Of a DNA stretch of 64,000 bases, positions 33,548 to 53,998 are shown piece after piece (the first letter of the stretch is position 1; the number at the start of each line of letters is the position of its first letter). The translations under genes were made by a program, and so were the position numbers. The stretch is from Macrostomum hystrix (taxonomy: Eukaryota > Animalia > Platyhelminthes). The stretch lies in the NCBI GenBank assembly GCA_950097015.1, contig CATNEN010000041.1, positions 1,240,001 to 1,304,000 of the forward strand, written 5' to 3'. The notes beneath the pieces are model-generated. The model searched no databases and had not been told where the DNA came from. It saw only the letters and a list, made by a program, of their open reading frames with translations.

Positions 33548-34126
33548 CACCCGTATATACACGTTAGGCGGTATAGAACACGGCGAAAACCGCCTAAAAG
33601 GCGGTCCATATCATGCTATATGATATCGTAGCATGATATAGACCGCCTTTTTTAAGCGCATAAAGGCCTTTTATGGCACAAATTTGAACAGCCGTTTCTG
33701 CTAATTTTTTTAGTTCGCTAATGCAAAATATCTATTTTACTACTTTTTAGTAACAATAATTTTAGTGTCACTAGACAAATATTTGAATGGCTTAGTACAA
33801 GTGCTAACAGGTTATATTAATTTATGTAAGCCCAGGGCCTAGCTGTTTATTATTTTTTTATTTCCAAGTCATTGAAACATTAGACAGTCACAGCATTATG
33901 GTATATCTTACATATTAGTCCATTAGAACTCGAGAACAATAAGACTAAACTTTAAAAGTATGGCAGGAATAGGATGGCGCTCAGTTTTTAGCTAGGCCTA
34001 TCGCCGCCTATGCCCTAGTTTAATATAGAAATAATATAGTAAAGCTTAAAACCTATGCTAGCTGTATATTGAGCAGGCATAATAATTAGCTATTCTAGTA
34101 TACTATTGCCTAGCTGCTAGCTGTAG
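33548..34126 (+). repeat. Left TIR (579 bp) of the KDZ element
   Basis: Reverse complement of 51530-52108; no mismatch seen on spot-checking by eye. Confidence 0.95.
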
Positions 34127-34914
34127 AATGAGTGCCTTCTGCTCGACACACTGACAAGATAGCTGTCCTATCATCTATCATTTTACTGTGATTTTACTGT
34201 GATATCATTTTTTGTAATTTTCTTCTTTTCTTCCCATTTTTAAAAGCAAGTAGGGCCTAAACAAATTAAAATTTTCAGATTTTTTTTGCAATTAGTTAAC
34301 TAATACGGTGTCTTCTTGAAGTATATAAAAATATATTTCTATAATTGTTAGTGTGCTGTCCAGATAAGCAGGAAATTATTCCTACAGTACCATAGGAATA
34401 AGACAAAAAAATTTATTGCACTGTGGGGATAAGCACTGCCATAGAAAATTCTATATATAAGGGTCCCTAGTATGCTCAGCACACAATCATGGCACACTAA
34501 GGCCCCTGGGGCACAACAACAATAACAATAGCAAAGCACACCACAGTAGAACAGAGTACAGTTCTAAAAGGTGTACACTATATTTAATCACTGTTCACAT
34601 CATGACTATTTTCTTAGAAACAGTACAAAGAAACAGTTGGCAAAGAAGCATAGATGGCATACAGTTGGCCCAAAAATTGACCCCCAAATTTTTTCCTAGT
34701 GAAAACTATGCCATCTTTATTACTATGCTATGGGTCATAGTCAATCATGTACTATAAACTATAGTGATAACCAATATTCAAAATAAAATAGTACTGTTGT
34801 CTTTTGTATATAGTATATTATTAGTAATTTTATATATTTTATCACTTACATTAGATGCATCTTTCTTATAAACCTATATCATGCTTGCCTTCTATAAATC
34901 CTGCCAGCTATTAA

Positions 34915-35420
34915 ATACCCTGCTGGCCTTTTCTATATCCTGCTAGCATTTTTGACCCTGTTGGCCTTCCACATACCCTGATAATGTTTCCTATGCCCTA
35001 GCACCTATTCCTATGTCCTATTGGCCTTTCCTATACCCTGCTGGCACAATGAGTGCCTTATACCCTACTACTATTCCTTGATAGTCTTTCCCACACCCTG
35101 CTGGCCTTCCCCACACCCTGCTGGACTTCACCACACCTCGTGATGGCCTCTACTTCATTCTGCTGGTCATCCCTGCACCTTAATGGCCATTCCCACACCC
35201 TGGTGGCCTTTCCCACACCCTGGTGGCCTTCCCCACACCCTGCTGGCCTTTCCCACACCCTGCTTGCCTTCACCACACATTGATGGCCATCCACACACCT
35301 TGATGACCTTTCCCAAACCCTGGTGGTCTTCCCCATACCCTGATGGCCTATCCCTGATACAGTTAGCCTTCTCAATCTGGCCATCCACTTACCCGATGGC
35401 CTTTTGCACACCTTGGTGCT
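34915..35420. repeat. Left subterminal array of degenerate ~20-bp units (CTGGCCTTCCCCACACCCTG)
   Basis: The reverse complement of the unit matches right-hand units, e.g. CAGGGTGTGGGGAAGGCCA at ~49825. Confidence 0.85.
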
Positions 35421-35493
35421 CCAGGCGAATGTATGTATGCCACAACCTGGTCACTCACGGAAGCTTATTTTAATATATATTTCCATTATACTA

Positions 35494-36846
35494 CGGGTGT
35501 GTCATAAGTAATGTCACTGTGGTTGTTGTGCGGGAAACCAAAGCAATAATCATCCAAATATAATATATTCTGAAAGTACATTTATTGAGAAGTTGCCACC
35601 ACACCTGAGCAGCAATTTTAATGTCTATGGCCAAAACTGTTGCAAGAATGTGTTAATCAGATTTAGCAAGCGCAATGCGATGAAATCTTCTTTTTGCAAC
35701 GAGCAAAACTCAACATGAATCACGACAAGATGCACATCCAGTTCAACGCTTTCATTCGCTTCAAGCTTGGAAAATCTGCACTTGAAGTAGAGGAGGATCT
35801 CCGGAACACACTGCCAGACAACTGCCCAACTCGCAGGACAATTTACAGGTGGTTTCAGAACTTTACTGATCCTGGGTTCGAATTGGGAGATGCCGCCAGA
35901 TCTGGACGACCATGTTCAACCAGGACAATAGAGAACATCGAAGTCATCAGCGACCTGGTCAAGGAAGACCCGCGGCAGTCTGTCAGGGAGCTAGCGGACT
36001 GCTTGGAGATTGATTTCAAGACAGTCCATCATATCTTGACAGAGGATCTCCATCTCCGAAACGTCTGCTCGGTCTGGGTGCCCCATGACCTCACTGCGGA
36101 CCAACGTCAGGCCCGTGTGAACTGCGCCAATCAGATCCTCAAGGTGTTCAGCAGCCGGGGCTTGGATGACATCCTAAACTGCCTGGTTGTTGAGGATGAG
36201 ACCTGGCTCCACCTGGATGGCAAAAGCAGCAAGGCAGACAATCGCTGCTGGCTGGGAGCTGGGGACTCCAGGCTGACTGTGACCAGGAGGTCTATCTCAG
36301 ACAAGAAGACCATGCTGCTGGTGGCATTCACGCCAAACAAACGAGTCTCCATCTGTACAACTCCGCCAAACACCAAGGTCGATGGCCAGTACTTCATCGA
36401 CTTTGTCCGACACACTGGGAACCTCTGGCGCACGCTCCGGTCAAACCCGATTCACCTGAACGAAGTTCTGTGGCAGATGGACAACGCACGGCCCCACACC
36501 TGTCAGGCTGTTTCGGATTTTCTGGCTGGACGGCGAGTAAACCTGCTCTGGCAGAGTCCCTACAGCCCAGACTTCAACTTGTGCGACAGGTTTCTCTTTA
36601 AATGGCTAAGGCAGACTTTTCCCAGAGAAGTTTCGCAAACCATGATGAGGTCAAAGAAGCCGCGTTGCACTGGTTCCGACAGCTGGAGGAAAAACACCTG
36701 CAGGCTGAGGTAGAGAAGCTGTACGAGCACTGCCAGAGGGTGATTGATATTGGGGGACACTATGTTGTTGATTGATACAGTTTCGTTCATCTGCGATTGT
36801 TAGTTGGTCTGTTTTACCCTCAGTGACATTACTTATGACACACCCG
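35494..36846 (+). mobile_element. Mariner (DD34D) element nested in the KDZ element
   Basis: Perfect 26-bp TIRs CGGGTGTGTCATAAGTAATGTCACTG (35494-35519 and 36821-36846). TA on the left, AA on the right. Confidence 0.95.
35715..36775 (+). pseudogene. Mariner transposase with a single frameshift near 36620
   Basis: HTH, RSGRP, WVPHDL, EDETW, DNARPH and YSPDFNLCD (D34D spacing). The canonical C-terminus FANHDEVKEAALHWF..GGHYVVD lies in another frame. Confidence 0.9.
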
Positions 36847-37000
36847 AAGTATGACTACTATAAGTACTTATTATAAGCTATTAGATTACTATAACAAGTA
36901 ACCTAAGGAATTAGTCTAAAGGAAGACTTAGGACTTATCAATATAAGTCTCTAGATTTTTGCGCTATGTAAAAGCTGGTATTGGTTCTTTAAAATTTCAG

Positions 37001-39200
37001 ATGTCACGTTCTGCTAGAAGGCCTAGTGCTTGGAACGTATTTGAGCGAATTAATTACGATCCTAGTTTAAACGTTGTTGGTATGCATTTAATTCAGATTT
37101 AAATTTATTCAATCCACTCACTCAGATGCCACATTCAACATAAAATAGTTTAAGAAACAGTGTCACTTTAGCTCTCAAATTTTTTAATGCTTATGAGATC
37201 TTTAAGCTCGAATGGTAATCCTAAATTTCAGATCAAGTCAGCGGCCTTCGCGAGCGCTATGCTTTGCTTGACAAGCAGGGGAAGGAAGCCTTGCGTGCCC
37301 AAGCCGCAGAACGCACAGATACCGCCTCTTTTCAGCGGAAGAAGCTGGTTAGCATGGCTAACAGCATCGTAAGCAATAAAGTTCGAATGCATGCATTCAT
37401 GCACGTAGTATACTCCCTTAGGCAATTATGAACTTTGTTGCTAATCTCAATGTATGCCTTCACTACAAGGTCGAGTCAGCCGATAATGCAGGCTACCACG
37501 TTATCGTGCTGCTGCATTCCAAAGCTGAAGGTGCCACTACCGTGTATGAATCGCAGGAAGTCGTAGGCTTCTGTGAGCGAGCGAATGTCGCCTCAGTAAG
37601 TATCTCGTAAAATCGCAGGTACTTGTTTACTGACAGTATTCAAATAGATTTTTAATCTTAGTTATTAGGGTTTTATTATAGTTTTTGTTAAATACTCACA
37701 GTTTATCTAAAATCGAACATTTTTTTGGCTTTTCAATCGTGCGTGTCGTCTGCTTCTGCTTCTCGGCCTAAGACTGCGGCTACCTTGCGCATTGCTGTCA
37801 GCAATATGCTGCAGAACAAGTTTAGTAAGTACGGGCTGACAATCGCATGCCTGGGTCCTATTCGAAGCCACATCATCGTTTTTCCACTCGTATTAATTTC
37901 TGGTACTTTAACACGGACTCTCGTCCGTGTTAAAATGATTGCAAGGCTATGCTATGTTTGAGAATTACGAATATTACATTAGATAATTGCAACAACTGAA
38001 ATTCCGTTATATTAAGTTGCAAGTAAATCACGTACAAAATTATAAACATTGCTAGTTTCAATTATGCTCATAAACACGCTTTTATTTCTACTTTTAGAAA
38101 GAGCAATTGGCAGACGGCAGTTGCAATTTGGAAAAGTTGCACTGTACGGTCGATGGATTCACTGGCCGGTCGGAGTTCGAAGTGATATTCACCCACAAAA
38201 GCTCTCAAAAACAGAGCTTCAAAAAGTCTGGGATGCCAGGGCCCAAATAAAATTTGAAAAAAAGATCAGTGAAGTCACTTTCTACAGCGACTCACCACTT
38301 CAGCCGGGAACGAGCAGCGATCTACCTGTGCTGCCGGGAACGAGCAGCGACTCACCTGTGCTACCGGGAACGAACAGCGACTCACCTGTGCTACCGGGAA
38401 TGAGCAGGGACTCACATGCGTTAGTCCAAGTCGGTGGGACAGCTGTGCAACCGGTCAAAGTCGGCGGGACAGCTGTGCAACCGGTCAAAGTCGGTGGGAC
38501 AGCTGTGCAACCGGTCAAAGTCGGCGGGACAGCTGTGCAACCGGTCAAAGTCGGTGGGACAGCTGTGCAACCGGTCAAAGTCGGCGGGACAGCTGTGCAA
38601 CCGGTCAAAGTCGGCAGGACCGCTGTGCAACCGGTCAAAGTCGGCAGGACCGCTGTGCAACCGGTCAAAGTCGGCGGGACAGCTCCAGCTGTGCAACCGG
38701 TCAAAGTCGGCGGGACAGCTCCAGCTGTGCAACCGGTCAAAGTCGGCAGGACCGCTGTGCAACCGGTCAAAGTCGGCGGGACAGCTGTGCAACCGGTCAA
38801 AGTCGGTGGGACAGCTGTGCAACCGGTCAAAGTCGGTGGGACAGCTGTGCAACCGGTCAAAGTCGGTGGGACAGCTGTGCAACCGGTCAAAGTCGGTGGG
38901 ACAGCTGTGCAACCGGTCAAAGTCGGCGGGACAGCTGTGCAACCGGTCAAAGTCGGCGGGACAGCTGTGCAACCGGTCAAAGTCGGCGGGACAGCTGTGC
39001 AACCGGTCAAAGTCGGCGGGACAGCTGTGCAACCGGTCAAAGTCGGCGGGACAGCTGTGCAACCGGTCAAAGTCGGCGGGACAGCTGTGCAACCGGTCAA
39101 AGTCAGCGGGACAGCTGTGCAACCGATCAAAGTCGGCAGGACCGCTGTGCAACCGGTCCAGAGTAGCAGCCAAGAAACAATAGTAGTGGTGGATTATTAA
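37001..39200 (+). CDS. Transposon accessory gene with an HMG-box-like N-terminus and a repeat tail (~498 aa); exons 37001-37079, 37232-37368, 37470-37595, 37773-37824, 38098-39200
   Basis: GT-AG introns with consistent phases (1,0,0,1). RRPSAWNVF..LRERYALLDKQGKEALRAQAAE resembles HMG helices. The C-terminus is (GGTAVQPVKV)n. Confidence 0.65.
38425..39150 (+). repeat. 30-bp coding tandem repeat (GTCGGCGGGACAGCTGTGCAACCGGTCAAA)n
   Basis: About 24 units; length variants are in-frame 6-bp additions. Confidence 0.95.
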
Positions 39201-39289
39201 ATGAGTAATGAATAAACAGTTTTTTTAAAGCTACGGAAATCGATTTTCTACGATTATGTAACTGTAATCATCCTAAAGACCTAAACCCT

Positions 39290-40130
39290 CAAAAATGTTC
39301 TTGCGCAGTGAGACACTGCGCTCTGGTTGTTAGTTGATGCCTTCAGCGTACCATTCTTCACCTGGGTGTTTGCACCACGAAGCGAAATTACCAGCTTCTG
39401 GACCTAGAGAGCTGCCACCTCCAAATTCTGAGGGGACAGCTCTGGCGATGAGCAGTGTGATAAAGCTGTGGGACGGAACGCAGGTGTCTGCCTGCGCATT
39501 GTCCGAAGCTTTGTCATGGGCTAGCGCTGGTGGCATTATCAAGCCTCTTTTCCTTGATATCGACCTTCAGGTGGAGTAGGAGTTTACGGTGACCCCGCTT
39601 CTCAGGCAGCCACTCAATCAACAGCACTCCCAGCGAATCCAAAAGATGGCGCCCACCTGCTTCTTCATCTATGGTGTCGCCTTGTCCTTCAGTGGAGTGG
39701 GTTCAGCTGCGAAAATATCGACTTATCCCCTGTCACGACATAATAAACTCCTCTTGGCGGCATTGAATAATGTGAATCAGCTGCTGCGCCCTGTTGCGCT
39801 GCATCAGTGAAGTAAGGAGTTTCTGCACACATCTGGCAAAAACCTTCGATATTTTCAACTGAGCCGTAGGATGGGCTGTGCAGCCATAACTGATGCCACA
39901 GGCCTCTGCTATCTCAGCAACAGTCACTCAACTGTCCTCGTGGACGACACTGAGTGGTGGAGATCCTAAGTCTCCGACTGCGAGCTTCACCATCGAAGTC
40001 ACATTTGCCTCCATGGAAATGGTGAATCCAAGGGACACAATTTGTCTGTGTTTGAGGCAAGCCCCATGCGCTGAAAAAAGGCAGTGAAAGAACTTTTTGA
40101 TTGTCCCTCATAAGTCTAACCACGTATCTG
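39290..40130 (-). pseudogene. Degenerate second mariner-like transposase remnant
   Basis: Fragments WIHHFHGGKCDFDGEARSRR, VAEIAEACGISYG, KISKVFARCVQKLLT and WYAEGIN*QPER, with many stops and frameshifts. Confidence 0.75.
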
Positions 40131-42171
40131 TTAAGGATAATGATAACCTACGATTCAACGCTCCGTCCGGCATTTAAAATTTTATAAAGTATATCTATAG
40201 AACTTTTAACAGTAAAATTTTCGAATTTCGTAGCAGTGGTAAACAAACAATCAATTGAAAAGTTCAATGCAGCAAAATGATAAACCCCTCGTATAATCGA
40301 TTCCTTATGGAATCTCTTTTAGCTCAAGTGTTTGTTTCTGTTGGGATCACCGTACTTTCAGCCGGTAATTAAATTTCTGTGAATTATTTCACAGGAATCA
40401 CAGCCCTTTACTGTTTTACAACCTAGTTGACCTACAGCTGTTTCTTTACTGCATGCAATTCACGCTATTTAGTGTTGCCATTTCAGCTTCCATTGCTTCT
40501 TTTGTCCACCTTCTCAAAGTTTTATACAGATACCTTTTAAAACATACTTTTCTAACATAAATTTGCATTTTATACAGCCATTTATGTTATTTTTCAAAGA
40601 CTTTTGATATAATGAAGTCCCCTCAAATAATAGTAACGTTGATGCTAGTAATTAGTAAAATATATTTAATTACAAAAGTAATATAAAAAATACTTTATCC
40701 TTTGCTACTGTTATTTTTCATTGGAGCGATTTTGATATCGATCAGCGATTGGACGGTTCACTTGTTCGGACTTGTAATTATTTTTTTTAGTTTTCGAAAC
40801 ACGTGTTTGGGCTCTCGTTTTTGGAAACTTTAGGACCTCTGCAGGGCCAGCCAGTTGGCAAGCATTTAGGGGCTGCCGTGTTGGTGGCTCTACTGGTTGA
40901 TCTCAAAGTCATAGCTGAATAAGTGACCGCTATCGGGTTGTCTATGACCTGGCACACCAATCAGCACCAGGGGCGTAGCCAGGATTTTCGGTTAGGTAGC
41001 GCAAACGGCGCCAATTGTGTTTATAGGCGCTCAAGTGACGCCAAATCAGCGCCTATACGGCACCAAGTGGGTGCTGAAAAGGCACGAAAATCGGCGCTGA
41101 AAGTGCGCCAGCTGGAAGGAGAGCACCAAGCCTGCGTGAAGGGGGCGCTGCATACCTTTGCGGCAGTAGCTAATGTAAGAATCTGGCCCTCCACGCGTTA
41201 CTATGACTACTTAAATTCACTACAGTTTTTCATCATCGATCATACGAACACGAAATGGAGAAATACGCATGTACATCTATGTATACAGCTTCAATATATT
41301 TGAGATGGACAAGAAATCCTTCTCTGCGTTTTGCTAGCGGTGCAGCGGATTCCAGCGAATGGTCTGGACGTTGCGAACTCATCCAGAAACCTGTTCAGCC
41401 CACCTGATTTAGGGACGACCCCGCGGTGGGCCAGCCACCACACGCCTGCAGCAGTTACATTAGGTTAGCACCTCTGTTGCTTAGTAGCTCCTGCCATAAC
41501 GTCCCCAGCTAGTGTGCAGGAGCATCGATCCGGATCCCTCGCCCCTGCTGTCTTCGCGGCAGCTCTCGCCTGGCGCCCTCGCAGCTTCCGCTACACACCC
41601 ACCGACAACTCTGGCCATTATCCTTTATAAAGCGGGTATAATTTTCTTTTAATTTCTCAATTTAACTCAACTCTATTTCTACCTAAGAGACAAATCAATC
41701 GGACTCGGCAGTCGTAGTTTTCTTCCATATGGGTTCTCTTGAATGATTCGCTATAGAACGGGCCGGTAAAGACGGCTCGATCACAGTTCCGCTATCCTTA
41801 CTTGTAAACTACAACACAGACTGTGCCTCTGCTCCAAAAATGGATGGCTTTTTGCGCGCTTACTTGCTTAGTATTCAGTTGGCCTCAGCTAATTGGGCTA
41901 ATAAACAAAAATAATTTATAGAAACGTAAAAACTGACACGCGTCAAACATATATGATTTAGTCGTACTAAAAAAGTCACACAACGTGCAAGTAGTGAATG
42001 AGCTAAAGAATCGACTTTGTCAATGCGCCTCTATGCTTCCACTATGCGCCGTGTGTTAGTTTTGATAGTTGTTTTATCTGACTTGTATATTTGTCTGTCT
42101 GGTATGTCTGAAAGTTAAGGCAGCATTTTACTTTCAATTGCCTCGTGCATTTTAGTTTTTTGTCAATAAAA

Positions 42172-42271
42172 TCAATCTCATCTCATTTGTCAATCTCATC
42201 TCATTTGTCAATCTCATCTCATTTGTCAATCTCATCTCATTTGTCAATCTCATCTCATTTGTCAATCTCAT
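42172..42271. repeat. 18-bp tandem repeat (CAATCTCATCTCATTTGT)n
   Basis: About 5 copies. Confidence 0.9.
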
Positions 42272-42829
42272 CGTTGTCTCTATAAGCTGGAAACCGGAAG
42301 CCATCCATCCATCTTTCGCTCCGGAATTCACGCTTATATGCTTTACTACACCAAATTTACACTGTTTTTAATCATTGGGCGTCCTGAACCTTAACGTTGA
42401 CATGCAAGTAAAATATCATAGTTGAATGTGGTTATAAAAATATTTAACAAATTACGTCATGTTTGAAATTTGAAGTACGTTTAAAGGCTTTTGGTACTTA
42501 CTTTTTATTCATTTTCTTTGAGCGCCAATGTTTTTGCTTTTTACAAGGTTCCCAACCGTAGGTCATGATTTATGAATGGTGACCCATGAGGTATGAGTAT
42601 GAGGTAAAATTTTATGAGCTGAAAATTATAATAAATTTCCCTTACTTCTAAAATTATTGGTGACCCATATTATTTCGTTTATACGAGTACGAGTATATTC
42701 AAGCGTTCGCTACTGACAGGTTCTGGCGCAGACTACTGTTTTGAGTAATCCACCACCTACATACCAGACAAAAAATTAGTTTGTGTAAGAGGTGGATTCA
42801 TAAATTATTCATTTGAGCCTTAGGAGCTA

Positions 42830-43387
42830 TCAAATCTAAATCAAAGATGGGTCCGGATGAGGTGCCCATCGAGGCGCTGCGCATCCACTGTGTGGCCAGT
42901 GAGGTCGCTGGTGTGATGAACCTCGTGCTCTTCGGTGAGGCGAATGGACCACGGCGCACATCGTCGCTATTCCCAAGAAGCCGGGCACCGCAAGGCTAGT
43001 GGAGCATCGAGGAATCTGCCTTCAGTCCTGAGCTGCGAAGCTGTTCAACCGGATGCTGCTATCGCGGTTTCAGCCCGTGCTGGATCCGGATCTGCGACCT
43101 GAGCAGAACGGCTTCCGGCCCCATCGCGGCACGGATTCTAGCTCTTCGGTGAGTCATCGAAAAGGTGCGGACTCGCCAGTTGAACCTGATTGTGGTCTTC
43201 ATTGATTTCAAGAAGGCTTTCGACTCGGTTGTCAAGGCCGCGCTCCCACTGGTGCTTCGAGCGTACAATGTACCAGAGCAGCTGGTGTCCGCCATCATGG
43301 CGTTGTACTGTCACACAACTGCTGCTGTGTCAACGCAGGACGGGCTGTCGGATTCCTTCGAGACATCCTCCGGGGTGCTCCAGGGGC
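42830..43387 (+). mobile_element. Non-LTR retrotransposon (RTE-like) reverse transcriptase fragment
   Basis: GPDEVP, IVAIPKK, KLFNRMLL, EQNGFRP, VFIDFKKAFDSV and GVLQG, with stops and frameshifts; truncated on both sides. Confidence 0.88.
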
Positions 43388-43549
43388 TACATGTATAACA
43401 GAATGGGGACAGAATGGGAAGGATGAAGGTGGCAGCGGTGTGACGGTGACAGAAAATGGTCATAACTTTTTTCTTCAAAAGATATTGAGCTCGGACCGCC
43501 TAGAATGAATTTCCCGTCCGAAAATTGTCTAGAAAACATTACGTTCCCG

Positions 43550-43863
43550 TAATGTCAGACGGCCAAGAGTTTCGCTTTCTGCCGCCATACTCAACCTTCA
43601 TCAACCCAGCTGAGCGAACAGGATCAGCACTGAAGGCAGCATTGAAGCAGAAAATTCAAGCGACTGCCATCCAGCGTGAAGTCGCTGACAGAAACTTGGC
43701 ACAGGCAGCGAATGCCACAATGGAACAGCATCGCATGTCAGTGCTCAAGCGAGAGGTGGAGGCATCATTGAACGTCATCACCCAACAGAAGTGCATCCAG
43801 TGGGTGAATCATACTCAAACGTACGTTCAGAGGTGCTTGCAGCTCGTCGACATCTTTGATTGA
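43550..43863 (+). mobile_element. 3' fragment of a Tc1/IS630-type DDE transposase
   Basis: FLPPYSTFINPAE..SALK and ITQQKCIQWVNHTQTYVQRCL match the Tc1/IS630 C-terminal pattern. Confidence 0.7.
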
Positions 43864-44067
43864 ATGACAACCAACTGACGCTTCTCGGTAGTTCAGTTAG
43901 CATGGACTATTGCACACTCCTTGTGTTCATTTTCATTTTTTACAGTTCATTCTCCGTTTCTGGTTTTTCATCCGCAGTTGACATGAAAAACAGAAACTCT
44001 CTTTGTTCTGGGCAAATTTGGTTGCAGTTTTGGCAAACTTAGATTGCAAAAAGGCTAAACTATCGGT

Positions 44068-44118
44068 TGCACATCTGGCCCAATTGGGGCAGGTGAAATT
44101 TATTATTATTATTATTGT
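44068..44118 (+). mobile_element. 3' tail fragment of the SINE family
   Basis: GCACATCTGGCCCAATTGGGGCAGGTG followed by (ATT)n; same tail as at ~56920. Confidence 0.65.
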
Positions 44119-44870
44119 TATCAAGCTGCTGATTTTGCTTGTTTCTGTGAGGAAAACCACAAAAATCGAGTTTCTGGTGATCATCCATATATCTTATTAA
44201 TCTATGCTCAAATCACTAACTGTTCCTTAATGATTGGCTTGAGCACGAATCGAGTGTTATTGACTACTGCTAGTTCACGAATGCATGTACATGTACTTAA
44301 CTTTGCGTGTTTTATAAGAATTGAAAGTTCGCAAGCATGCGCATGGAATTTAAAACGTCAAGGATCGACATGTTCAGACCATTGACAATGCATAAAAATC
44401 AAATATAAAAATGTTGGTTGATAATTTTATTTATCATTTAAACAGAGACGCAGGATGGCAGATAAACATGCAAACATGTATAATTGGAAGTTTACTGAAG
44501 GCTGGATAAGCTTTAGTGAATTTATGCAGAATACTGTAGTACTCGTATTTACAAGTTCAAATGCCAGGAAAGCAAAAGTATAACACATTATTTGAAGCAC
44601 GACGCCAACTAATATGGTAGTAATAAGTACAAATATGGGATCAACTTGCAAAACTCGTCCTTACAAATTTTAATAGGCTAGTAAATAGGCTAGTTAAAGT
44701 TCTAAGTAAATCTAAAATGTTCATCTGAAAAACCGACTAACAACAAAAGCTACAGCTTTCTGTAAGTCCAACACTTTAATATCTTCTCCATTGGCCTATG
44801 CTAAAACTGAAAACATCTGCCGTTTAACAGATAGTGGAATGTCGTAAAAATCGAGCTGGCCATAGTCATA

Positions 44871-47800
44871 TTAGTACTGGCCGTCATCAACTTCGTCCTG
44901 GCCGTCATCAACTTCGCCCTGGCCGTCATCAACTTCGTCCTGGCCGTCATCAACTTCGTCCTGGCCCTCTTCATCTTCGTCCTGGCCGTCGTCATCTTCG
45001 TCCTGGCCGTCGTCATCTTCGTCCTGGCCGTCGTCATCTTCGTCCTGGCCGTCGTCATCTTCGTCCTGGCCGTCGTCATCTTCGCCGAGGCGAACCTCGT
45101 CCCTCTCCTGATTTGAACGCTGAACGGCTTTAAGAAAAAAAATTAAGAACGTAAATTTTGCAGTGCATTTTTACAGTTTGCAATAGATCAATAACGTTGT
45201 ACATACTGTTTAGTAACTAAACTGGGGAACCCCAGTTCTTGAATCAAAGCATTCAACCCTAACCCGCGAGTAAGCATATAGGGAAATTTATTCTGTCAAA
45301 GAACGCACTGGAAACCTAATCGCACAACAAGTGAAACAACGGCAATCTTACCAACGTAAATGCTGGTATGTGATAATACCGACGAAGAAAACACGGTGCT
45401 TTCTGACGGAAACGTCTGGATGTGGCGGTCAATCAGCCGTTGAATACCAAAGGCACGGAGAGCACGCAACGTGGCCTCTGGTCGGCCTGCTAACTGCGCA
45501 ACTTCTATTTGAGTTCGAAGCAGAGCAACGGCAAAAAAGTGGGATGCACGTCTGACTTCCTCACGAACCAGGCTAGCCTCTTCGTTGATTCGTTGATAAA
45601 GCTTTAATAGCTTGACCGCTTGTCGCTTGAGTGCGTGATCAGGCACTGCAGAAGTAGCGTCAGTGCAGGCGTTCCAAATGTTGGTCAATCTGATCATTCC
45701 AGTAGGATGACAATTCGCATTGTGCTCTTTGACTAGCTTCTCGCCCTTCGCAGTAAGTTTGTTAAGAGACCTGTTTAGCACTTTGTTGAGCTTTTGGCCA
45801 GCTGCAGTAGCTGCTTGTCGAATTAGAAACGCACGTTCACATGCTAGCTGCTGCAGCTTACCGAGAACAGCTTCTTTAGGCGTTCTCCTCGTTAGTCCAC
45901 GAGCGTCATTATCAGCGTAATGCAGCAGCTCCTGCTCCCAAACGCGACAGTTGCCGACGAACGATTCGATATCACCTGGTGAAAGTAAAGTAAATAAAGT
46001 AGATGCCTACACTAGCCATTATTATCCAGCGTGTGGACACATTTAGGGCTTACATTTTTCTTTGGATACGGGACAAAAACAAAAACGAATGCATTTAAAC
46101 ATTTACGACGCAAAAAAATATTAAATATTACATATTAAATGTAAAAAATAATATATTAAATATTAAATAATGCCTTTTTAATTAAAGTAGCTTATCCATA
46201 ATCATTGCTCACTATTCCCTCCAAAGTTACAATAGCTGACGTAGCAACTCAGTTTTCTTAATGTAGAACAGCCCTACTAGGCCATTGCAAACATGCAACA
46301 TACCGTCTAGTCCATTCTTTTGGCAGAATGATTGAACTTCCGATTGAAAACGCTTCAGGTTTTGCTCCTCTACCTTGGTTCGTTGAAAAAGCCAGACACC
46401 TATAAACAAATTTAGGAAGAAGTTAAAAAGTTATGACGAAAGAAATGATGAAAATGAACATACGCGAACAAATTCATGCATTAAATGAAGGCAGGCAGCT
46501 GAAAGAGGCCAACTGGTAAGGAAAGCCTTAGTAATTAAAAACTTTGTCCCTATAAAGAGATTACGATATTGTTTAGGAAAATGCTGCAAAGTATATGCGT
46601 ATACTTCATAGAATTTCGGACAACTCACTAATAGTATTAATGACGTTGAGATTGACGGAGCTCGCCCAATAGTTAAGGAATTCACGCCTGTTGACATGAG
46701 TCATTTCCTTTAACTGTGGCCCAAAGCGCCGTGACATAGACCAAAGCCGTTCGCAGCTTTCGCCATCAGTCAAGCCCACTCCGGATTGGTGTCGAATGCC
46801 AAACTTAGTTTGACAGGCCTCTTTGTGACCATATGAGTGAAAAGCTGGAATGGCGAAGCTGACTCTGGCATCACTGAAGTGACCAGCAAGCTTGCAACCG
46901 ATGTCATAAGAGACAACGAGCTTCTGGTCTTCTGGATGATCGTCCAGAAGCTTAGAAACCATGGCTTTAGAGTAGGCAAGCCTGAGAAACAATGAAAAAC
47001 CGATGCGCACTTTGTATTAGTAGTATATATAGAATTTGCATGAAATTATTTAAAAAGAACTTTTTCTAGTAAGAAAAAGATTTTCCAGAATGAAAGGAGA
47101 AAGAAAAGTAGATGGACATGTCTTTATAGAAGTATGTGTTGCAATCCTACCTTTCTCCTTTTGTCACGAGGTCGGAAAGATAAGAAACAGCAGAGTGCCG
47201 GCAGGATCCACAGAATAAGCCGAAAATGTCAAGCTTACTTTCGTCAGATGCAGTCGTAAGGTCTTTTCCACGACCTCCAGCAGTCCAATTGGGACAATAG
47301 GACTTGCTAGGGACTTCTGACGTTTGAAAGTCCACATCGACAAAATAGCCAGTGGATGGTGGAAGCACAGCTTTTCCAGCAAGCCTTCGGTGTCTGAAAC
47401 CGAAGCAGGCATCCAGCATCAAAAAGACAGGAATGGTTGGATTTCTACTGACAGAGAAGCAGCGCAGGGCATCTTCGACTTCAGTAGATGTAGCGGCACA
47501 ATTAGCGTCGTCGCCTAACTCGCTGCTGTTCATTTGTGTCTCCTGTATAGAAAGGGCAGGGCACAACCCTTAACAGTATGTTTCGTAACTGGTATAAAAA
47601 TATAATTATGAAATATATATATAAATATATTAATTATTATATTTTTCATTATAAAAATATAAGTATGTAGAAGATATAATTGACGAGTAAGATAAAATAA
47701 TAAAACCTTTACGATGAAGCACGAGGGGCATGTTGCTTTAGGGCCCCAGCGAATATACATCAAAAGCCGTCGAAACGCTCGAAAGCTGCTGGATGTGTTT

Positions 47801-49463
47801 AACGCACGGAAAATGTTGACCTAAAATAGACGGTTGTTAGATCACATTTTCTGACTAAGAACACTCTTTCAGGCGTCCATCATCAGGAAAATTGGACTGC
47901 TCTTTTCGGCATCAGAGTCCGAATCAACCTACAGAAGTTACATGACATTTTAATAAAAGCCAATCAGTGTATTGCAATGAGAGAGCATGGTTATACTCGT
48001 ACATATATGAAAGGAAGATCTTTTACCACATAGCATGCTGGACATGATGGCTTTCTTCCCCAACGAAAGCTCTGCAGCACACGGCGGAAAGACCGGAACG
48101 CCCCAGTTACGTTGAGCGCTCTAAATAGATCGATCTAAAAATTTAATGTATGAGAATGGCTGATTGTTAAGACACACCTATTACAAAATAATAGCAAGTT
48201 GGGCCAGTCTGATGAAAACTTGCTGATGTGGATGACTGCGCCCACATAGACTTCTTGGAGCGCCTAATAGCACTGCAAATCGAAAACAACGATGCTGTGC
48301 AGTTGCAATTCAGCGAATCAATTAGAAGAAGCAGTTCAATAGACACGGCAGTCAGTTCCCGAGAGCCCTCTGGTCGAGGCTGCAAGGGCCAAAATCCATG
48401 TGCCAGAAGAGCTGCGTGGTACGTAGTACATGTACACATCTCAAGATTTGCTTTTAGTTCGCTTCCTGAAATGAGGTAGTGAGTACTGATACTGATTGAG
48501 TAAAGTCTTGCTAGAATATCAGTGTCCCCTAAATATGACGTTTGTTTTTGTAGCAATCGGCGTCATATTGCAGCTCAGAACATTCACGTGACTTGTTATT
48601 TTAAGAAGCTAAGTAACAAAGTAAGCTACTGCAAACAGAAAAAATGCTGAATTCAGCCGAGAATCACCATCTTCAGTCACAATAGTGACCGGAAGTACGC
48701 TGTAGAGAAGACAGCTGCACAGCCGAGAAAGCCGCACTTGTGATGAAACGGCCTCAAAGAAGTCACCCTGACGAGCGGGTAAAAAAGAGCACTGTCGCTA
48801 GAAATCATATATAAGAAAATACCCAATTCATGTAAAAATGCATTCAATACAATATATAATATATATATCATAATACAATATAAACAACATAATTATAAAC
48901 CAGATCTGCATAGTATCGAACTTACATTCCAGCGTTGAACAGCATGGGGCGGCATATGGGCATGGCGGGCATCTAAGCAAGTGGAGCAGACCGATAGTAA
49001 GTGACACTTGAGGCACCGGAATATTTCAGTCTCGCAACCGCAAAAGACACATGGGCGCTTGTTGTAGTGACCCGCTAAACCGACTGTCAAGACCCCTGAC
49101 TGAAATAACTCATTCCAAGCGTCGTTTTCTTCGCTGCAAAAGGTCTTAAAACGGCTTGGCTTTGCGGACTTCGATTGAGCACGATCGTCATGAGTCTCGA
49201 CTTCTTCAGCAACGATAGGGTCGTCTTGGATGTCCAACCATTCTTCTTCTTCTGGGTCGTTGTTGTATACAGGCTGGGTGTCACTGCATAGAAAGAAAGA
49301 GTAGTCAAGAAAAGTTGTGAATCATTTGAATTTTGAACCATTATACTCACGGGATGCAACACTTCGATGTCAACGGAGTTCGAACGATACGTGCTCGCTT
49401 ACGACACGCAGGAGTACAATACTTTACTGACGTCTTGGCAATAGACTGCTTTCGTCTTCCCAT
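44871..49463 (-). CDS. CxC-KDZ transposase (~890 aa); exons 49463-49351, 49283-48926, 48767-48668, 48465-48185, 47820-47713, 47542-47151, 46981-46629, 46399-46304, 45975-45352, 45127-44871
   Basis: CxC cluster CVFC..FRCLKC..CSTC..H..PPH..RWNGDFF; CTC..LLAHGFWP..TAVSIELL; CPSC. Catalytic-core motifs MLDACF, GLFCGSCRH, KGER, YDIGC, PAFHSYGH..CQ and GLTDGESCERLWS. The frame stays open across all junctions. The exon 4 donor is the least certain. Confidence 0.88.
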
Positions 49464-49719
49464 GTAGCTGAAATCAGATAAGCAAATAGTGTCGGATAAT
49501 CGGATAAATATTTGATGATTACTAATTTTCAAAGACAATAAAAGAATCAAAACAAAACGTATCCATAAAGCAGGTCGAAGCGAAGATTGCTTTAACAAAA
49601 TAAAAGATAAGCGTCCAAGACTCACCCGGGTGTAGTCTGTTGCCTCGAGAAACGGGTATGTAAAGAAGAGAATCAGAAGGCAGGAAGGCACCAAAGTGAA
49701 AGAAAAGGCAGTAGAATTT

Positions 49720-51345
49720 GGAAAAGGCTAGCGTTGTGAGGGGAAGGCCAGCGTAGTGTGGGAAAGGCCAGCGTAGTGTGGGAAAGGCCAGCGTAGTGTG
49801 GGGAAGGCCATTAGGATGTGGCAGCAGGGTGTGGGGAAGGCCATCTGGGTGTGGGAAAGGCCAAAGAGGTGTGGGAAAGGCCACAGAGGTGTGGGAAAGG
49901 CCACAGAGGTGTGGGAAAGGCCACAGAGGTGTGGGAAAGGCCAGCGTAGTATGGGGAAGGCCAGCGCAGTGTGGGAAGGCCAGCGTAGTATGGGAAAGGC
50001 CATTAGGATGTGGCAGCAGGGTGTGGGGAAGGCCACCTGGGTGTGGGAAAGGCCATCAATATGGGGAAGCCCACATAGGAATGAATAAGGTCAGTAGGGT
50101 GTTGTGAAGGCCAAAAATGTGTGGGAAAGGCCACAGAGGTGTGGGAAAGGCCAGCGTAGTGTGGCGAAGGCCAGCGTTGGGTAAGGAAGGCCAGCGTAGT
50201 GTGGGGAAGGGCAGCGTAGTGTGGCGAAGGCCAGCGTTGGGTAAGGAAGGCCAGCGTAATGTGGGGAAGGCCATTAGTATGTGGCAGCAGGGTGTGGGAA
50301 GGCCACCTGGGTGTGGGAAAGGCCATCAATATGGGGAAGCCCACATAGGAATGAAGAAGGCCAGTAGGGTGTTGTGAAAGCCAAAAATGTGTTGGAAAGG
50401 CCACCTGGGTATGGGAAATGCCACAGAGGTGTGGGAAAGGCCATCAAGGTATGGGGAAGGCCACATAGGAGTGGAGAAAGCCACATAGGAGTTAAAAGGC
50501 TAGTAGGGTGTTGTAAAGGCCATTAAGGTGTGGGGAAGGCCATAAAAGTGTAGGAAAATCCATCCAGGTGGGGAAGGACACAAAGGAGTAGAGAAGGCCA
50601 ATAGGGCATGGTGAAGGCCAGTAAGGTATGGTGAAGGCCAGTAAGGTATGGTGAAGGCCAGTAGGGTATGGTGAAGGCCAGTAGGGTATGGTGAAGGCCA
50701 GTAGGGTATGTTGAAGGCCAGTAGGGTATGGTAAAGGCCAGTAGGGTATGGTGAAGGCCAGTAGGGTATGGTGAAGGCCAGTAGGGTATGGTGAAGGCCA
50801 GTAGGGTATGGTGAAGGCCAGTAGGGTATGAAGGCTAGTAGGGTATGGTGAAGGCCAGTAGGGTATGGTGAAGGCCAGTAGGGTATGGTGAAGGCCAGTA
50901 GGGTATGGTGAAGGCCAGTAGGGTATGGTGAAGGCCAGTAGGGTATGGTGAAGGCCAGTAGGGTATGGTGAAGGCCAGTAGGGTATGGTGAAGGCCAGTA
51001 GGGTATGGTGAAGGCCAGTAGGGTATGGTGAAGGCCAGTAGGGTATGGTGAAGGCCAGTAGGGTATGGTGAAGGCCAGTAAGGTATGGTGAAGGCCAGTA
51101 GGGTATGGTGAAGGCCAGTAGGGTATGGTGAAGGCCAGTAAGGTATGGTGAAGGCCAGTAAGGTATGGTGAAGGCCAGTAGGGTATGGTGAAGGCCAGTA
51201 GGGTATGGTGAAGGCCAGTAGGGTATGGTGAAGGCCAGTAGGGTATGGTGAAGGCCAGTAGGGTATGGTGAATGCCAGTAGGGTATGGTGAAGGCCAGTA
51301 GGGTATGGTGAAGGCCAGTAGGGTATGGGGAAGGCCATCAAAGTG
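49720..51345. repeat. Right subterminal array: degenerate GGGAAAGGCCA units, then a homogeneous 20-bp (GGTGAAGGCCAGTAGGGTAT)n block
   Basis: Seen directly; inverted relative to the left array. Confidence 0.93.
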
Positions 51346-51529
51346 TGGCAAAAGCCACAAAGGAGTGGAGTGGTAACAAGTAAAGCCTCTGAAGCAACAA
51401 TTGGCTTTAACCTACAACACAACATAGTAGTAGAATAGCTAGAACCTAATTATAAACTTAGGCCTATAATTACAAACAATACACATATTTATGCCAGCAA
51501 CTAGTTATACAATTTAGCTAGCTACAGGC

Positions 51530-52108
51530 CTACAGCTAGCAGCTAGGCAATAGTATACTAGAATAGCTAATTATTATGCCTGCTCAATATACAGCTAGCA
51601 TAGGTTTTAAGCTTTACTATATTATTTCTATATTAAACTAGGGCATAGGCGGCGATAGGCCTAGCTAAAAACTGAGCGCCATCCTATTCCTGCCATACTT
51701 TTAAAGTTTAGTCTTATTGTTCTCGAGTTCTAATGGACTAATATGTAAGATATACCATAATGCTGTGACTGTCTAATGTTTCAATGACTTGGAAATAAAA
51801 AAATAATAAACAGCTAGGCCCTGGGCTTACATAAATTAATATAACCTGTTAGCACTTGTACTAAGCCATTCAAATATTTGTCTAGTGACACTAAAATTAT
51901 TGTTACTAAAAAGTAGTAAAATAGATATTTTGCATTAGCGAACTAAAAAAATTAGCAGAAACGGCTGTTCAAATTTGTGCCATAAAAGGCCTTTATGCGC
52001 TTAAAAAAGGCGGTCTATATCATGCTACGATATCATATAGCATGATATGGACCGCCTTTTAGGCGGTTTTCGCCGTGTTCTATACCGCCTAACGTGTATA
52101 TACGGGTG
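51530..52108 (-). repeat. Right TIR (579 bp) of the KDZ element
   Basis: Reverse complement of 33548-34126. Confidence 0.95.
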
Positions 52109-53998
52109 GGAAAGGCCTAATTAGCATATTTGAATGCGAACTACGACTGTGTAGTACACTAAAACAAAACCATTATAAATATTAATGAAAAACTGAAGAA
52201 ATATCCCTAACAAATATAGCTAACAAAAATAATGCACATAATTCTAACTAGCATATTAAATTACATTTAATTAGAGAGACAACACCACAATACCCATTTG
52301 GTGGTTCTAAAAGTTTTTTTCAGAATACAAAAGTTTGACAGTAAAAAAACTACCAGCAGAGTAGCAGTTTAAAGTTTAAGTTGGTATACTGATATAGATA
52401 TAAGCTAGTAAAATTAATCTGAGCCTCCCAAAAAATTGTGAGCAGAAATATTGGATGTAGCCAAGTAAGTAAGTTGTACACTATCAAAGCAAAAAATGTT
52501 GAAAATTGTTTTTATGAACTAAAAATTTAGACTACCGTTATGCAAATTCATTCCATGTAAAAAAACACTTCAAGCATATTAAAAAAATTCTGTGTCAAAA
52601 TCAAATTTAAAAAAATTAATGGCGCTAAACATCAGTTTCTAGGACGAATTCAAACAGTCGATCGTCTTTAGCTTGGTACCAATTCAAACCAAGGAGTAGA
52701 TTCGACTAGGAGTAGATTCAAACAGGCCCAGTTTTTCTCCTGTGTCCATGATTTAGTAACAGCTACGATAAATTCAGGTGTGATTAGCAAACGATTCGGT
52801 GTGATTGTGTGACGGCTTTTTTATCGTGCTAAAAACGATTAATTGACGCATTGTTCACTCAAGGACCACTATTGGAGTAGTCTACGCGCGCTATTGTTAA
52901 AAAATGAAATCAAAATTATTGTTTCAATAAAAGGGTAGAATGCACGAATAATTTCAATAAATAATAAGATACTACAAGGCATGAAGGTTTTTAATAAATA
53001 GTAAGAATAGTAAGGATTGGTCGGCCGTAGCAGTAAATTAAGGCACTTTTATCTGTGAAAGAAATGAGTCAGAAATTACAGGTAACGCATTTGGGCCAGA
53101 TGTACTGCCAGCGGCACAGCCGCCTGTGCCATTTAGGGGCGCCTCTTAAGGCTGCGTACAGCTTTTCAGTCCGTGGACTTGGGAGGCCACCACCACCCAC
53201 ATTTCTACCTGATGCTGGTATACCAGTTTTTTACAACTAGGCACACTGAAGCCAAGGACCACTAGGAGTAGTGCTACTCTTAGTTCTAATCCTAGTGGTC
53301 CTTGACTGAAGCACTAGTAGCCATGTATCTTGCTTCAGGACTAAAATCGTTTTCCTTCGGCTAAGATTCGAACTTCCGAACTCTACTTCACAAGTCCGAA
53401 GCTCTAAGCACTGTTTATACAAGGTCTGGTATACGAGCTTAGTAAGTGTAATTTGTATTATTGTTGCATGAGCTGATTTACAATGTTAAAGTGTTCGTGA
53501 AGATAAATTTTAAACGGAAACACAGGTCTCTAATATTAGACAGGAATCGGAGATTCCAGAATCTTATGTGATCCTGTAACTCTTCATATTTTCATGTCTG
53601 TGGGGTTTGCACTTTAGAATAAATATAAAAAATTTACAATTTTTTATTTTGAAAGTGATTTTTTAAAAGGTATTCAGAGAAGTGGACAGTCACATGCAGG
53701 CATATATTGTGAGAATAAGGCAGCTGTAAAGCCCTGCAAATTAGCTAAATGAGACGGAAACTGTCGTTGGCGCAGGGCAATAATCAGAATGTGAGATAAA
53801 TCCACTTAAAACGATTGGCAACTGAGTAAAAATTCGAATTGGAAGAAAAACATGAGCAGTAAAGTCTAGCTTGCTTGATACTTTGTTCAATGGATGTCAA
53901 AAAATCAACAGCCTAAATATCCAATAACAAGTTATAGCAATAAATAATAGCTAGGTGACGTCCTGGCATCATTTTTTTTCGTTGACATAAAAGGTGGC

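What the first reader, a model, noticed from the sequence alone, without database searches (positions are those of the whole stretch)
47713..48134. Duplicated, diverged exon cassette in the KDZ transposase: switch between full enzyme and truncated repressor-like isoform
Seen: two paralogous 108-nt phase-0 exons. A1 (48134-48027) reads IDLFRALNVTGAFRSFRRVLQSFRWGRKPSCPACYV and A2 (47820-47713) reads VNIFRALNTSSSFRAFRRLLMYIRWGPKATCPSCFI (18/36 identical), both with intact splice sites. A1 is followed by B1 (47928-47869, VDSDSDAEKSSPIFLMMDA-stop), a paralogue of the next exon's PVFLMLDACF that stops right after the first catalytic-motif Asp. Inference: A1+B1 gives a Zn-cluster protein without a catalytic core, while A2+B2 (or A1+B2) gives full transposase. 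This would parallel the P-element transposase/repressor splicing switch, or be a mutually exclusive exon pair.
Basis: partly seen in the sequence, partly recalled or inferred. Interest (0 to 1): 0.87.

Follow-up and report, generated by a model that had tools for sequence, protein, structure and literature searches.

The report
Recombination scar inside a jumping-gene enzyme
A flatworm-type jumping gene carries a second, old-looking copy of one small exon and part of the next, most likely a join between two distant relatives of the gene; no RNA data could be read, so a splicing switch is untested.

Summary
A1 (48134-48027), B1 (47928-47869, ending in TGA) and A2 (47820-47713) read as described on the minus strand. 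A1 and A2 are clear paralogues: 18/36 identical, 29/36 similar.

They lie in an intact intron-bearing KDZ transposase gene (49463-45296). It encodes 826 aa with one A exon. The gene sits in an 18.6-kb element with perfect 579-nt TIRs and a 7-bp TSD.

Every homologue found, all from Macrostomum lignano, has one A module. In one M. lignano locus it is a single 108-nt exon.

A1 and A2 are saturated at synonymous sites (pS 0.94, pN 0.32). Both keep all 11 positions I took as family-conserved, so neither has drifted neutrally for long.

The gene is phylogenetically chimeric. Its 5' part groups with P0003 and its 3' part with P0001. The switch falls between exon E3 and exon C, and the cassette is the only irregularity in that interval.

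Best reading (about 0.5): the cassette is the overlap left by recombination or template switching between two diverged KDZ lineages. B1 has no donor of its own. By inference, the default mRNA carries a premature stop and encodes a 339-aa N-terminal protein; full-length enzyme needs B1 skipped.

The parts
45296..49463 (-). Whole KDZ transposase gene. Exons: E0 49463-49351, E1 49283-48926, E2 48767-48668, E3 48465-48185, (A1, B1), A2 47820-47713, B2 47542-47151, C 46981-46629, D 46399-46304, F 45975-45296.
   Evidence: Exon model built from GT-AG sites and homologue alignment. It gives an open 826-aa frame with one A exon. Pfam KDZ PF18758 scores 1.5e-27 on exon C and weakly on B2; CxC1 is weak on E3.
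48185..48465 (-). Exon E3 (CxC1-like Cys cluster), last exon of the P0003-like 5' part. The donor TTT|GTAATA at 48185 leaves a 50-nt intron before A1.
   Evidence: E3 alone favours window+P0003; the window+P0001 tree is 6.3 lnL worse, AU 0.10.
48027..48134 (-). A1: 108-nt phase-0 copy of the 'A' module (two helices plus a CPAC knuckle).
   Evidence: It is 25/36 identical to P0001 and 24/36 to P0003. With B1 it groups with P0003 at 70% bootstrap.
47929..48026 (-). 98-nt intron between A1 and B1.
47869..47928 (-). B1: truncated copy of the 5' end of exon B (Ser/Asp-rich linker plus the strand with the first catalytic Asp). It ends in TGA at 47871-47869, exactly where similarity to B2 stops. It has no own donor.
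   Evidence: donor scan by eye.
47821..47868 (-). 48-nt spacer carrying A2's branch-point-like CTAAC and acceptor. The presumed join of the two parental sequences is at its 5' edge.
   Evidence: It has no significant similarity to the intron before A1 (shuffle p 0.49).
47713..47820 (-). A2: second 108-nt phase-0 copy of the A module (CPSC instead of CPAC), directly upstream of the only complete exon B.
   Evidence: At sites where P0001 and P0003 differ it matches P0001 7:2 (my count, using the peptides printed).
47151..47542 (-). B2: complete exon B with an unusually long linker (about 35 aa against 8-16 in homologues) and the N-terminal half of the KDZ core.
   Evidence: Its topology is unresolved when tested alone.
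33548..34126 (.). Left TIR of the 18.6-kb host element, preceded by the TSD GGAAAGG at 33541-33547.
51530..52108 (.). Right TIR, 100% complementary to the left one, followed by the TSD GGAAAGG at 52109-52115.

Best explanation
The cassette is the overlap left at a join between two diverged KDZ transposase lineages. The 5' part (E0-E3, A1 and the first 57 nt of exon B) comes from a lineage nearest to M. lignano P0003. The part from A2's acceptor onward comes from a lineage nearest to P0001. The join was staggered, so the A exon and the start of exon B are present twice, once from each parent. Each copy looks selected because each served in a working gene until recently. B1 is cut off at the join, reads into TGA there and has lost its native donor. 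Inferred consequence: the A1 donor and B1 acceptor were a working splice pair in the 5' parent. The default mRNA should therefore run A1-[B1+spacer+A2]-B2 with a premature stop. That encodes a 339-aa N-terminal Cys-rich protein, or the mRNA is degraded. Full-length transposase (826 or 862 aa) arises only if B1's acceptor is bypassed (E3-A2, A1-A2 or A1-B2). The copy was mobilised recently, possibly in trans. Shown: the anatomy, the single A module in relatives, the selection signature and the 5'/3' phylogenetic conflict. Inferred: the join mechanism, the exact breakpoint, the splicing outcome and any inhibitor activity.
For: One A module in all five close homologues, with weaker single matches in more distant ones. 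A is a single 108-nt exon in M. lignano locus L001. A1 vs A2: codon-position identity 16/30/11 of 36, pS 0.94, pN 0.32; only 3 of 17 shared residues use the same codon. Neutral drift above 0.2 substitutions per site would keep the ORF plus the 11 chosen family-conserved residues in under 0.5% of trials. Introns flanking A1 and A2 are unalignable. The 5' partition groups window+P0003 (UFboot 91) and the 3' partition groups window+P0001 (99). AU rejects window+P0003 for the 3' part (0.003) and is marginal the other way for the 5' part (0.08). Informative sites are 7:22 in the 5' part against 71:20 in the 3' part, Fisher 2.6e-7. The max-chi2 break falls at residues 264-268, no permutation of 20,000 reaching the observed value. 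The 5'/3' ML-distance ratio is 2.36 for window-P0001 and 0.56 for window-P0003, but 1.33 for P0001-P0003 and 0.7-1.5 for all other pairs, so the window gene is the discordant one. By exon, E3 favours P0003, C favours P0001 and B2 is unresolved. A1B1 groups with P0003 (70%) and A1/A2 monophyly is 5.7 lnL worse. Perfect TIRs and a TSD indicate recent mobilisation.
Against: Only three ingroup lineages and three outgroups were available. The 5' partition has about 112 columns and its AU value is marginal. A1 itself is not clearly P0003-like (4:3 at discriminating sites), and the first half of B2 is mixed (6:6). The breakpoint is therefore only bounded to 48185-46981. Lineage- and region-specific rate shifts could mimic part of the signal. 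Perfect 579-nt TIRs mean both ends come from one lineage, so the exchange must have been an internal patch, or older than the TIRs' last common copy; this is unexplained. No parental copies were seen. No RNA evidence of any kind was obtained. Intact splice signals and ORFs in A1 and B1 are equally expected if the module is maintained by selection.
Confidence: 0.5

Rival explanations
1. One reading: an old tandem duplication inside the gene, kept by selection as an alternative-splicing module. A1/A2 would be mutually exclusive exons, or B1 a poison exon. The element would then make either full transposase or a truncated, repressor-like Zn-cluster protein.
For: A1 and A2 have equal length and phase, and all signals are intact. 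Both A copies keep every family-conserved residue I chose although synonymous sites are randomised. B1 keeps the conserved strand and a Ser/Asp linker like P0001's. The cassette sits in a recently mobilised element. RNA runs of related species hold 6-22% of the cassette's sampled words, but which part they hold is unknown.
Against: No homologue has two A modules. A1/A2 are not sisters in the best tree. The duplication would have to predate the P0001/P0003 split and be lost twice. The 5'/3' phylogenetic conflict explains the same conservation without selection on the pair. B1 has no donor. No docking/selector-type complementarity was found. There is no RNA evidence.
Confidence: 0.15
2. Both A exons are constitutive: B1 is ignored and A1 is spliced to A2, giving an 862-aa transposase with a tandem A module and a long linker.
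For: A1-A2 is in frame. B1 lacks a donor and has the weakest acceptor tract of the gene (by eye). Both A copies are undecayed.
Against: In the P0001 model the A module sits just before a short low-confidence linker and the first core strand. A second copy plus a 35-aa linker has no precedent among the 150 relatives. It is untested in RNA.
Confidence: 0.1
3. Old in-gene duplication that is simply dead: A1 and B1, or A2, are decaying pseudo-exons.
For: B1 ends in a stop. A2 has two substitutions at positions invariant in all other sequences (G11S, A33S in CPSC) and A1 has one (A15S).
Against: With synonymous sites saturated, a neutrally drifting copy would have lost its frame or conserved residues: under 0.5% survive 0.2 substitutions per site. 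Second-codon-position identity is 30/36 against 11/36 at third positions.
Confidence: 0.05
4. Assembly artefact: two KDZ paralogues were mis-joined in the assembly.
For: Chimeric signal; the locus is a repeat family with other copies in the genome.
Against: Contigs from an independent study of the same organism hold 84-90% of the sampled 31-mers across 47570-48165. The two halves are far too diverged to mis-join by overlap. The element has coherent perfect TIRs and a TSD.
Confidence: 0.03

Closest known systems
KDZ (Kyakuja-Dileera-Zisupton) transposases with N-terminal CxC Cys clusters; nearest proteins are Macrostomum lignano A0A1I8GP41 (P0001), A0A1I8HMS9 (P0003) and BOX15_Mlig024767g1 (P0006)
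   Same: Pfam KDZ and CxC1 matches. Conserved CPxC, D, D and E columns. The same 108-nt A exon as in the M. lignano locus. TIRs plus a TSD.
   Different: It carries an extra A exon and a truncated B exon. The TSD is 7 bp here, whereas Zisupton makes 8 bp (PMC12730594). The linker before the first catalytic strand is longer.
Chimeric or internally rearranged DNA transposons made by abortive gap repair with template switching (known for P, Ac/Ds, Mu and mariner; cited from my own knowledge, not checked here)
   Same: An internal join between related templates that leaves a short duplication, inside an element with intact ends.
   Different: The templates here are very diverged paralogous lineages (about 50-60% protein identity). 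No junction microhomology or parental copy could be examined.
P-element repressors: the 66-kDa product of IVS3 retention and the KP internally deleted element (from my own knowledge)
   Same: The predicted short product keeps the N-terminal putative DNA-binding Cys-rich part and lacks the catalytic core, as repressor-type truncated transposases do.
   Different: If the scar reading is right, the truncation is hard-wired by structure (KP-like), not a tissue-regulated splice choice. No repression, DNA binding or expression has been shown. The transposase superfamily is unrelated.
Mutually exclusive exons derived from tandem exon duplication (e.g. Dscam, tropomyosin; from my own knowledge)
   Same: Two homologous exons of identical length and phase in series.
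   Different: A truncated third exon with a stop lies between them. Including both or neither keeps the frame, so nothing enforces exclusivity. No competing RNA structure was found. The copies are not sisters in the tree.

Membership tests
KDZ transposase / transposon | KDZ catalytic domain (Pfam PF18758) | tested here: met
   Exon C scores 97 bits, E 1.5e-27. Exon B2 scores 24 bits, just under the cut-off, as expected for a half domain. Homologues carry PF18758.
KDZ transposase / transposon | Conserved acidic catalytic residues and Cys/His columns | tested here: met
   The window protein has the Asp of LDACFG, the Asp of SYDIGC and the Glu of TDGESCER, aligned with columns D278, D390 and E438 of P0001. 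It also has the CPxC and H..H..C columns.
KDZ transposase / transposon | N-terminal CxC-type Cys cluster | tested here: inconclusive
   CxC1 PF18802 scores 21.6 bits on exon E3 alone, below the 26.9 cut-off. Homologues are named CxC1/CxC2 domain proteins.
KDZ transposase / transposon | TIRs and a target-site duplication | tested here: met
   579-nt perfect TIRs and a 7-bp TSD, GGAAAGG. Zisupton's TSD is 8 bp (PMC12730594), so the length differs.
Mutually exclusive exon pair | Homologous exons of the same length and phase | tested here: met
   Both are 108 nt and phase 0, 50% identical.
Mutually exclusive exon pair | Transcripts contain exactly one of the two | not tested
The protein database holds no products of this organism.
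Mutually exclusive exon pair | A mechanism enforcing exclusivity (frame, steric hindrance or competing RNA pairing) | tested here: not met
   Including both or neither keeps the frame. 206 nt separate the A1 donor from the A2 acceptor. No meaningful inverted repeats were found.
Splicing-controlled transposase/repressor switch (P-element type) | Two mRNA isoforms from one element, one encoding a truncated DNA-binding protein | not tested
   Only the coding potential is shown: 339 aa against 826 aa.
Splicing-controlled transposase/repressor switch (P-element type) | Tissue-specific choice and repression of transposition | not testable with these tools
   Needs tissue-resolved RNA data and an excision assay.
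Recombinant (chimeric) transposon gene | Different nearest relatives for the two sides of a breakpoint | tested here: met
   Support is strong for the 3' side and marginal for the short 5' side.
Recombinant (chimeric) transposon gene | Identifiable parental copies and a defined junction | not testable with these tools
   No tool here searches this genome. Other KDZ copies exist in it according to earlier notes.

The most novel reading that the evidence does not exclude
The A1-B1(TGA)-A2 arrangement is a maintained self-regulation module of an active animal KDZ transposon. Splice choice at B1's acceptor would set the ratio of full transposase to a truncated Cys-cluster protein that blocks transposition. 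It would be a P-element-like or poison-exon control that arose independently, perhaps seeded by recombination between lineages.
Probability: 0.12. Interest if true: 0.75.

Novelty: new member of a known kind. Interest (0 to 1): 0.35.

Why it matters
If the scar reading holds, it shows that very diverged KDZ lineages in flatworm-type genomes exchange internal segments. It also shows that such a chimera, probably encoding only a truncated N-terminal protein, can still be mobilised with perfect ends. That bears on how large animal KDZ elements diversify and how defective, possibly inhibitory, copies arise. If the module is instead maintained, it would be the first splice-based self-control reported for this superfamily, as far as I know. 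Either way, the locus gives a concrete junction set that existing RNA data could test.

Tried and rejected
No junction evidence exists.
- Products of this organism in the protein collection: exon B2 as query gave nothing. Queries with P0001 and P0003 returned only M. lignano proteins. The locus of P0001 is not on record.
- Intron homology around A1 and A2: the CTAAC/TTAAC similarity seen is no better than shuffles (p 0.49). It is probably the branch-point motif, so it does not mark a duplication boundary.
- Second KDZ copy in the window: weak hits near 2914 and 4204 were not confirmed with full-length homologues.
- Docking/selector RNA pairing: only AT-rich low-complexity pairs and one 12-nt pair.
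- Pinning the breakpoint to B1/A2: not possible. Exon B2 alone is unresolved and A1 is ambiguous (4:3).
- Earlier notes searched by sequence gave nothing.
- The AF2 model of P0001 only places the A module. It was not used for a fold search because that does not bear on the cassette.
Full report
**Observation.**
B1 ends in TGA at 47871-47869. A1 and A2 align without gaps: 18/36 identical, 29/36 similar, pairwise E 3e-16. Each is the other's only real hit in the 64-kb window. Both are 108 nt and phase 0, with AG acceptors and GTAAA donors. Contigs from an independent study of the same organism hold 84-90% of the sampled 31-mers across 47570-48165. The cassette is therefore not an artefact of one assembly.

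**Context.**
The exons belong to an intron-bearing KDZ transposase gene.
- Its exons are E0 49463-49351, E1 49283-48926, E2 48767-48668, E3 48465-48185, A, B2 47542-47151, C 46981-46629, D 46399-46304 and F 45975-45296.
- With one A exon the frame is open for 826 aa. With A1 and A2 together it is 862 aa. With A1-B1 it stops at 339 aa.
- Pfam finds KDZ (1.5e-27 on exon C) and a weak CxC1 match on E3.
- The gene lies in an 18.6-kb element with perfect 579-nt TIRs and a 7-bp TSD, GGAAAGG. This copy was therefore mobilised recently.

**Relatives.**
- The closest proteins in 1.84 billion representatives are Macrostomum lignano KDZ proteins: P0001 (70% identical in exon C), then P0003/P0002, P0006, P0007 and P0013.
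- A profile of the A module finds one full-length copy in each of the five close homologues (P0001, P0003, P0006, P0007, P0013). It finds only weak, partial matches in more distant relatives, and no protein has two full modules in tandem.
- In the M. lignano locus L001 the module is a discrete 108-nt exon, present once.
- In the canonical layout, A is followed by a short Ser/Asp-rich linker of about 8-16 aa and then the strand with the first catalytic Asp. A1-B1 looks like this. A2-B2 has a linker of about 35 aa.
- In an AlphaFold model of P0001 (pLDDT 78), A forms two helices and the CPAC loop. A low-confidence linker and the first core strand follow.

**Age and selection.**
- A1 and A2 are 53% identical in DNA. 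By codon position the identity is 16, 30 and 11 of 36. pS is 0.94 and pN is 0.32.
- Only 3 of 17 shared residues use the same codon.
- The flanking introns are unalignable. The apparent CTAAC similarity is no better than shuffles (p 0.49).
- In simulations, 0.2 substitutions per site of neutral drift leave the frame and the 11 positions I took as family-conserved intact in under 0.5% of trials.
- Both copies were therefore under purifying selection for nearly all of a very long divergence. This rules out an old dead duplication. It does not show that the selection acted on both copies within one gene.

**Chimerism.**
- At sites where P0001 and P0003 differ, the window gene matches them 7:22 in the 5' part and 71:20 in the 3' part (Fisher 2.6e-7).
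- The best single breakpoint is at residues 264-268, just before A1. None of 20,000 permutations reached the observed value.
- With three outgroups, ML trees give window+P0003 for the 5' part (UFboot 91) and window+P0001 for the 3' part (99).
- AU tests reject window+P0003 for the 3' part (0.003). For the roughly 112-column 5' part they are marginal against window+P0001 (0.08).
- The 5'/3' ratio of ML distances is 2.36 for window-P0001 and 0.56 for window-P0003. It is 1.33 for P0001-P0003 and 0.7-1.5 for every other pair. The window gene is the discordant one.
- Outgroup-polarised shared-derived sites point the same way, but are few: 6:2 in the 5' part and 0:5 in the 3' part.
- By exon, E3 favours P0003, exon C favours P0001 (AU 0.024 against the alternative) and B2 is unresolved.
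- The switch therefore lies between 48185 and 46981. The cassette is the only structural irregularity in that interval.
- A tree of A plus the conserved strand puts A1B1 with P0003 (70%). Trees that force A1 and A2 together are 5.7 lnL worse (AU 0.07).

**Best explanation (confidence about 0.5).**
A staggered join, by recombination or template switching during repair, linked a P0003-like 5' parent to a P0001-like 3' parent. This left the A exon and the start of exon B in two copies, one from each parent. B1 stops at the join and has lost its native donor.

The A1 donor and the B1 acceptor were a working pair in the 5' parent. I therefore infer that the default mRNA runs A1-[B1+spacer+A2]-B2 with a premature stop. 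It would encode a 339-aa N-terminal Cys-rich protein, or be degraded. Full-length enzyme requires bypass of B1's acceptor. The product would be KP-like, meaning structurally hard-wired rather than a regulated switch. Any inhibitory activity is speculation.

**Weak points.**
- Few taxa were available and the 5' partition is short.
- A1 is ambiguous (4:3) and the first half of B2 is mixed (6:6).
- Perfect TIRs require both ends to come from one lineage, so the exchange must have been an internal patch.
- No parental copies were seen.

**Rivals.**
- Constitutive tandem inclusion of A1 and A2: 0.10.
- An old dead duplication: 0.05, disfavoured.
- An assembly artefact: 0.03, disfavoured.

**Earlier notes.**
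Earlier notes of this scan list other KDZ copies in the same genome, two of them described as nine-exon genes. Nine is the exon count of this gene without A1 and B1. This is an unchecked lead that sibling copies lack the cassette.

**Novelty.**
The gene is a new member of a known kind: a KDZ transposon gene with a recombination scar. The maintained-switch reading stays open at about 0.12 and would be of high interest if true.

Noticed in passing
window 33541-52115: The 18.6-kb host element has perfect 579-nt TIRs and a 7-bp TSD, GGAAAGG. The TSD sequence equals the core of the element's own 20-nt subterminal repeat (TGGGAAAGGCC...).
   Followed up: partly
window 49719-51337 and 35076-35354: Long arrays of a 20-nt unit lie between the transposase gene and the right TIR, with inverted partners near the left end. 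They may be subterminal transposase-binding repeats. They create long spurious ORFs on both strands.
   Followed up: partly
window 43165-43863: Reverse-transcriptase-like (RVT_1, weak) and DDE_3-like ORF fragments lie inside the element between its two genes. They look like nested transposon debris.
   Followed up: partly
window 44856-45084: A 21-nt minisatellite (10.9 copies, 93% matches) lies about 200 nt downstream of the transposase stop codon.
   Followed up: no
window 48135-48184 and 47821-47868: The E3-A1 intron is only 50 nt and the B1-A2 spacer only 48 nt. The other eight gaps between predicted exons are 66-328 nt. Whether 50 nt is above this species' minimum intron size was not established.
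   Followed up: no
window 47437-47542 (start of exon B2): The linker between A2 and the first catalytic strand is about 35 aa, against 8-16 aa in all homologues. The tail of exon E3 is also about 13 aa longer than in homologues.
   Followed up: no
protein P0003 (M. lignano A0A1I8HMS9), residues 1-110: The N-terminus is unrelated to KDZ and lacks the E1/E2 region. The public gene model looks fused or mis-spliced. P0002 is a near-identical paralogue that starts inside exon B.
   Followed up: no
The tool itself says this is no evidence of anything.
   Followed up: no
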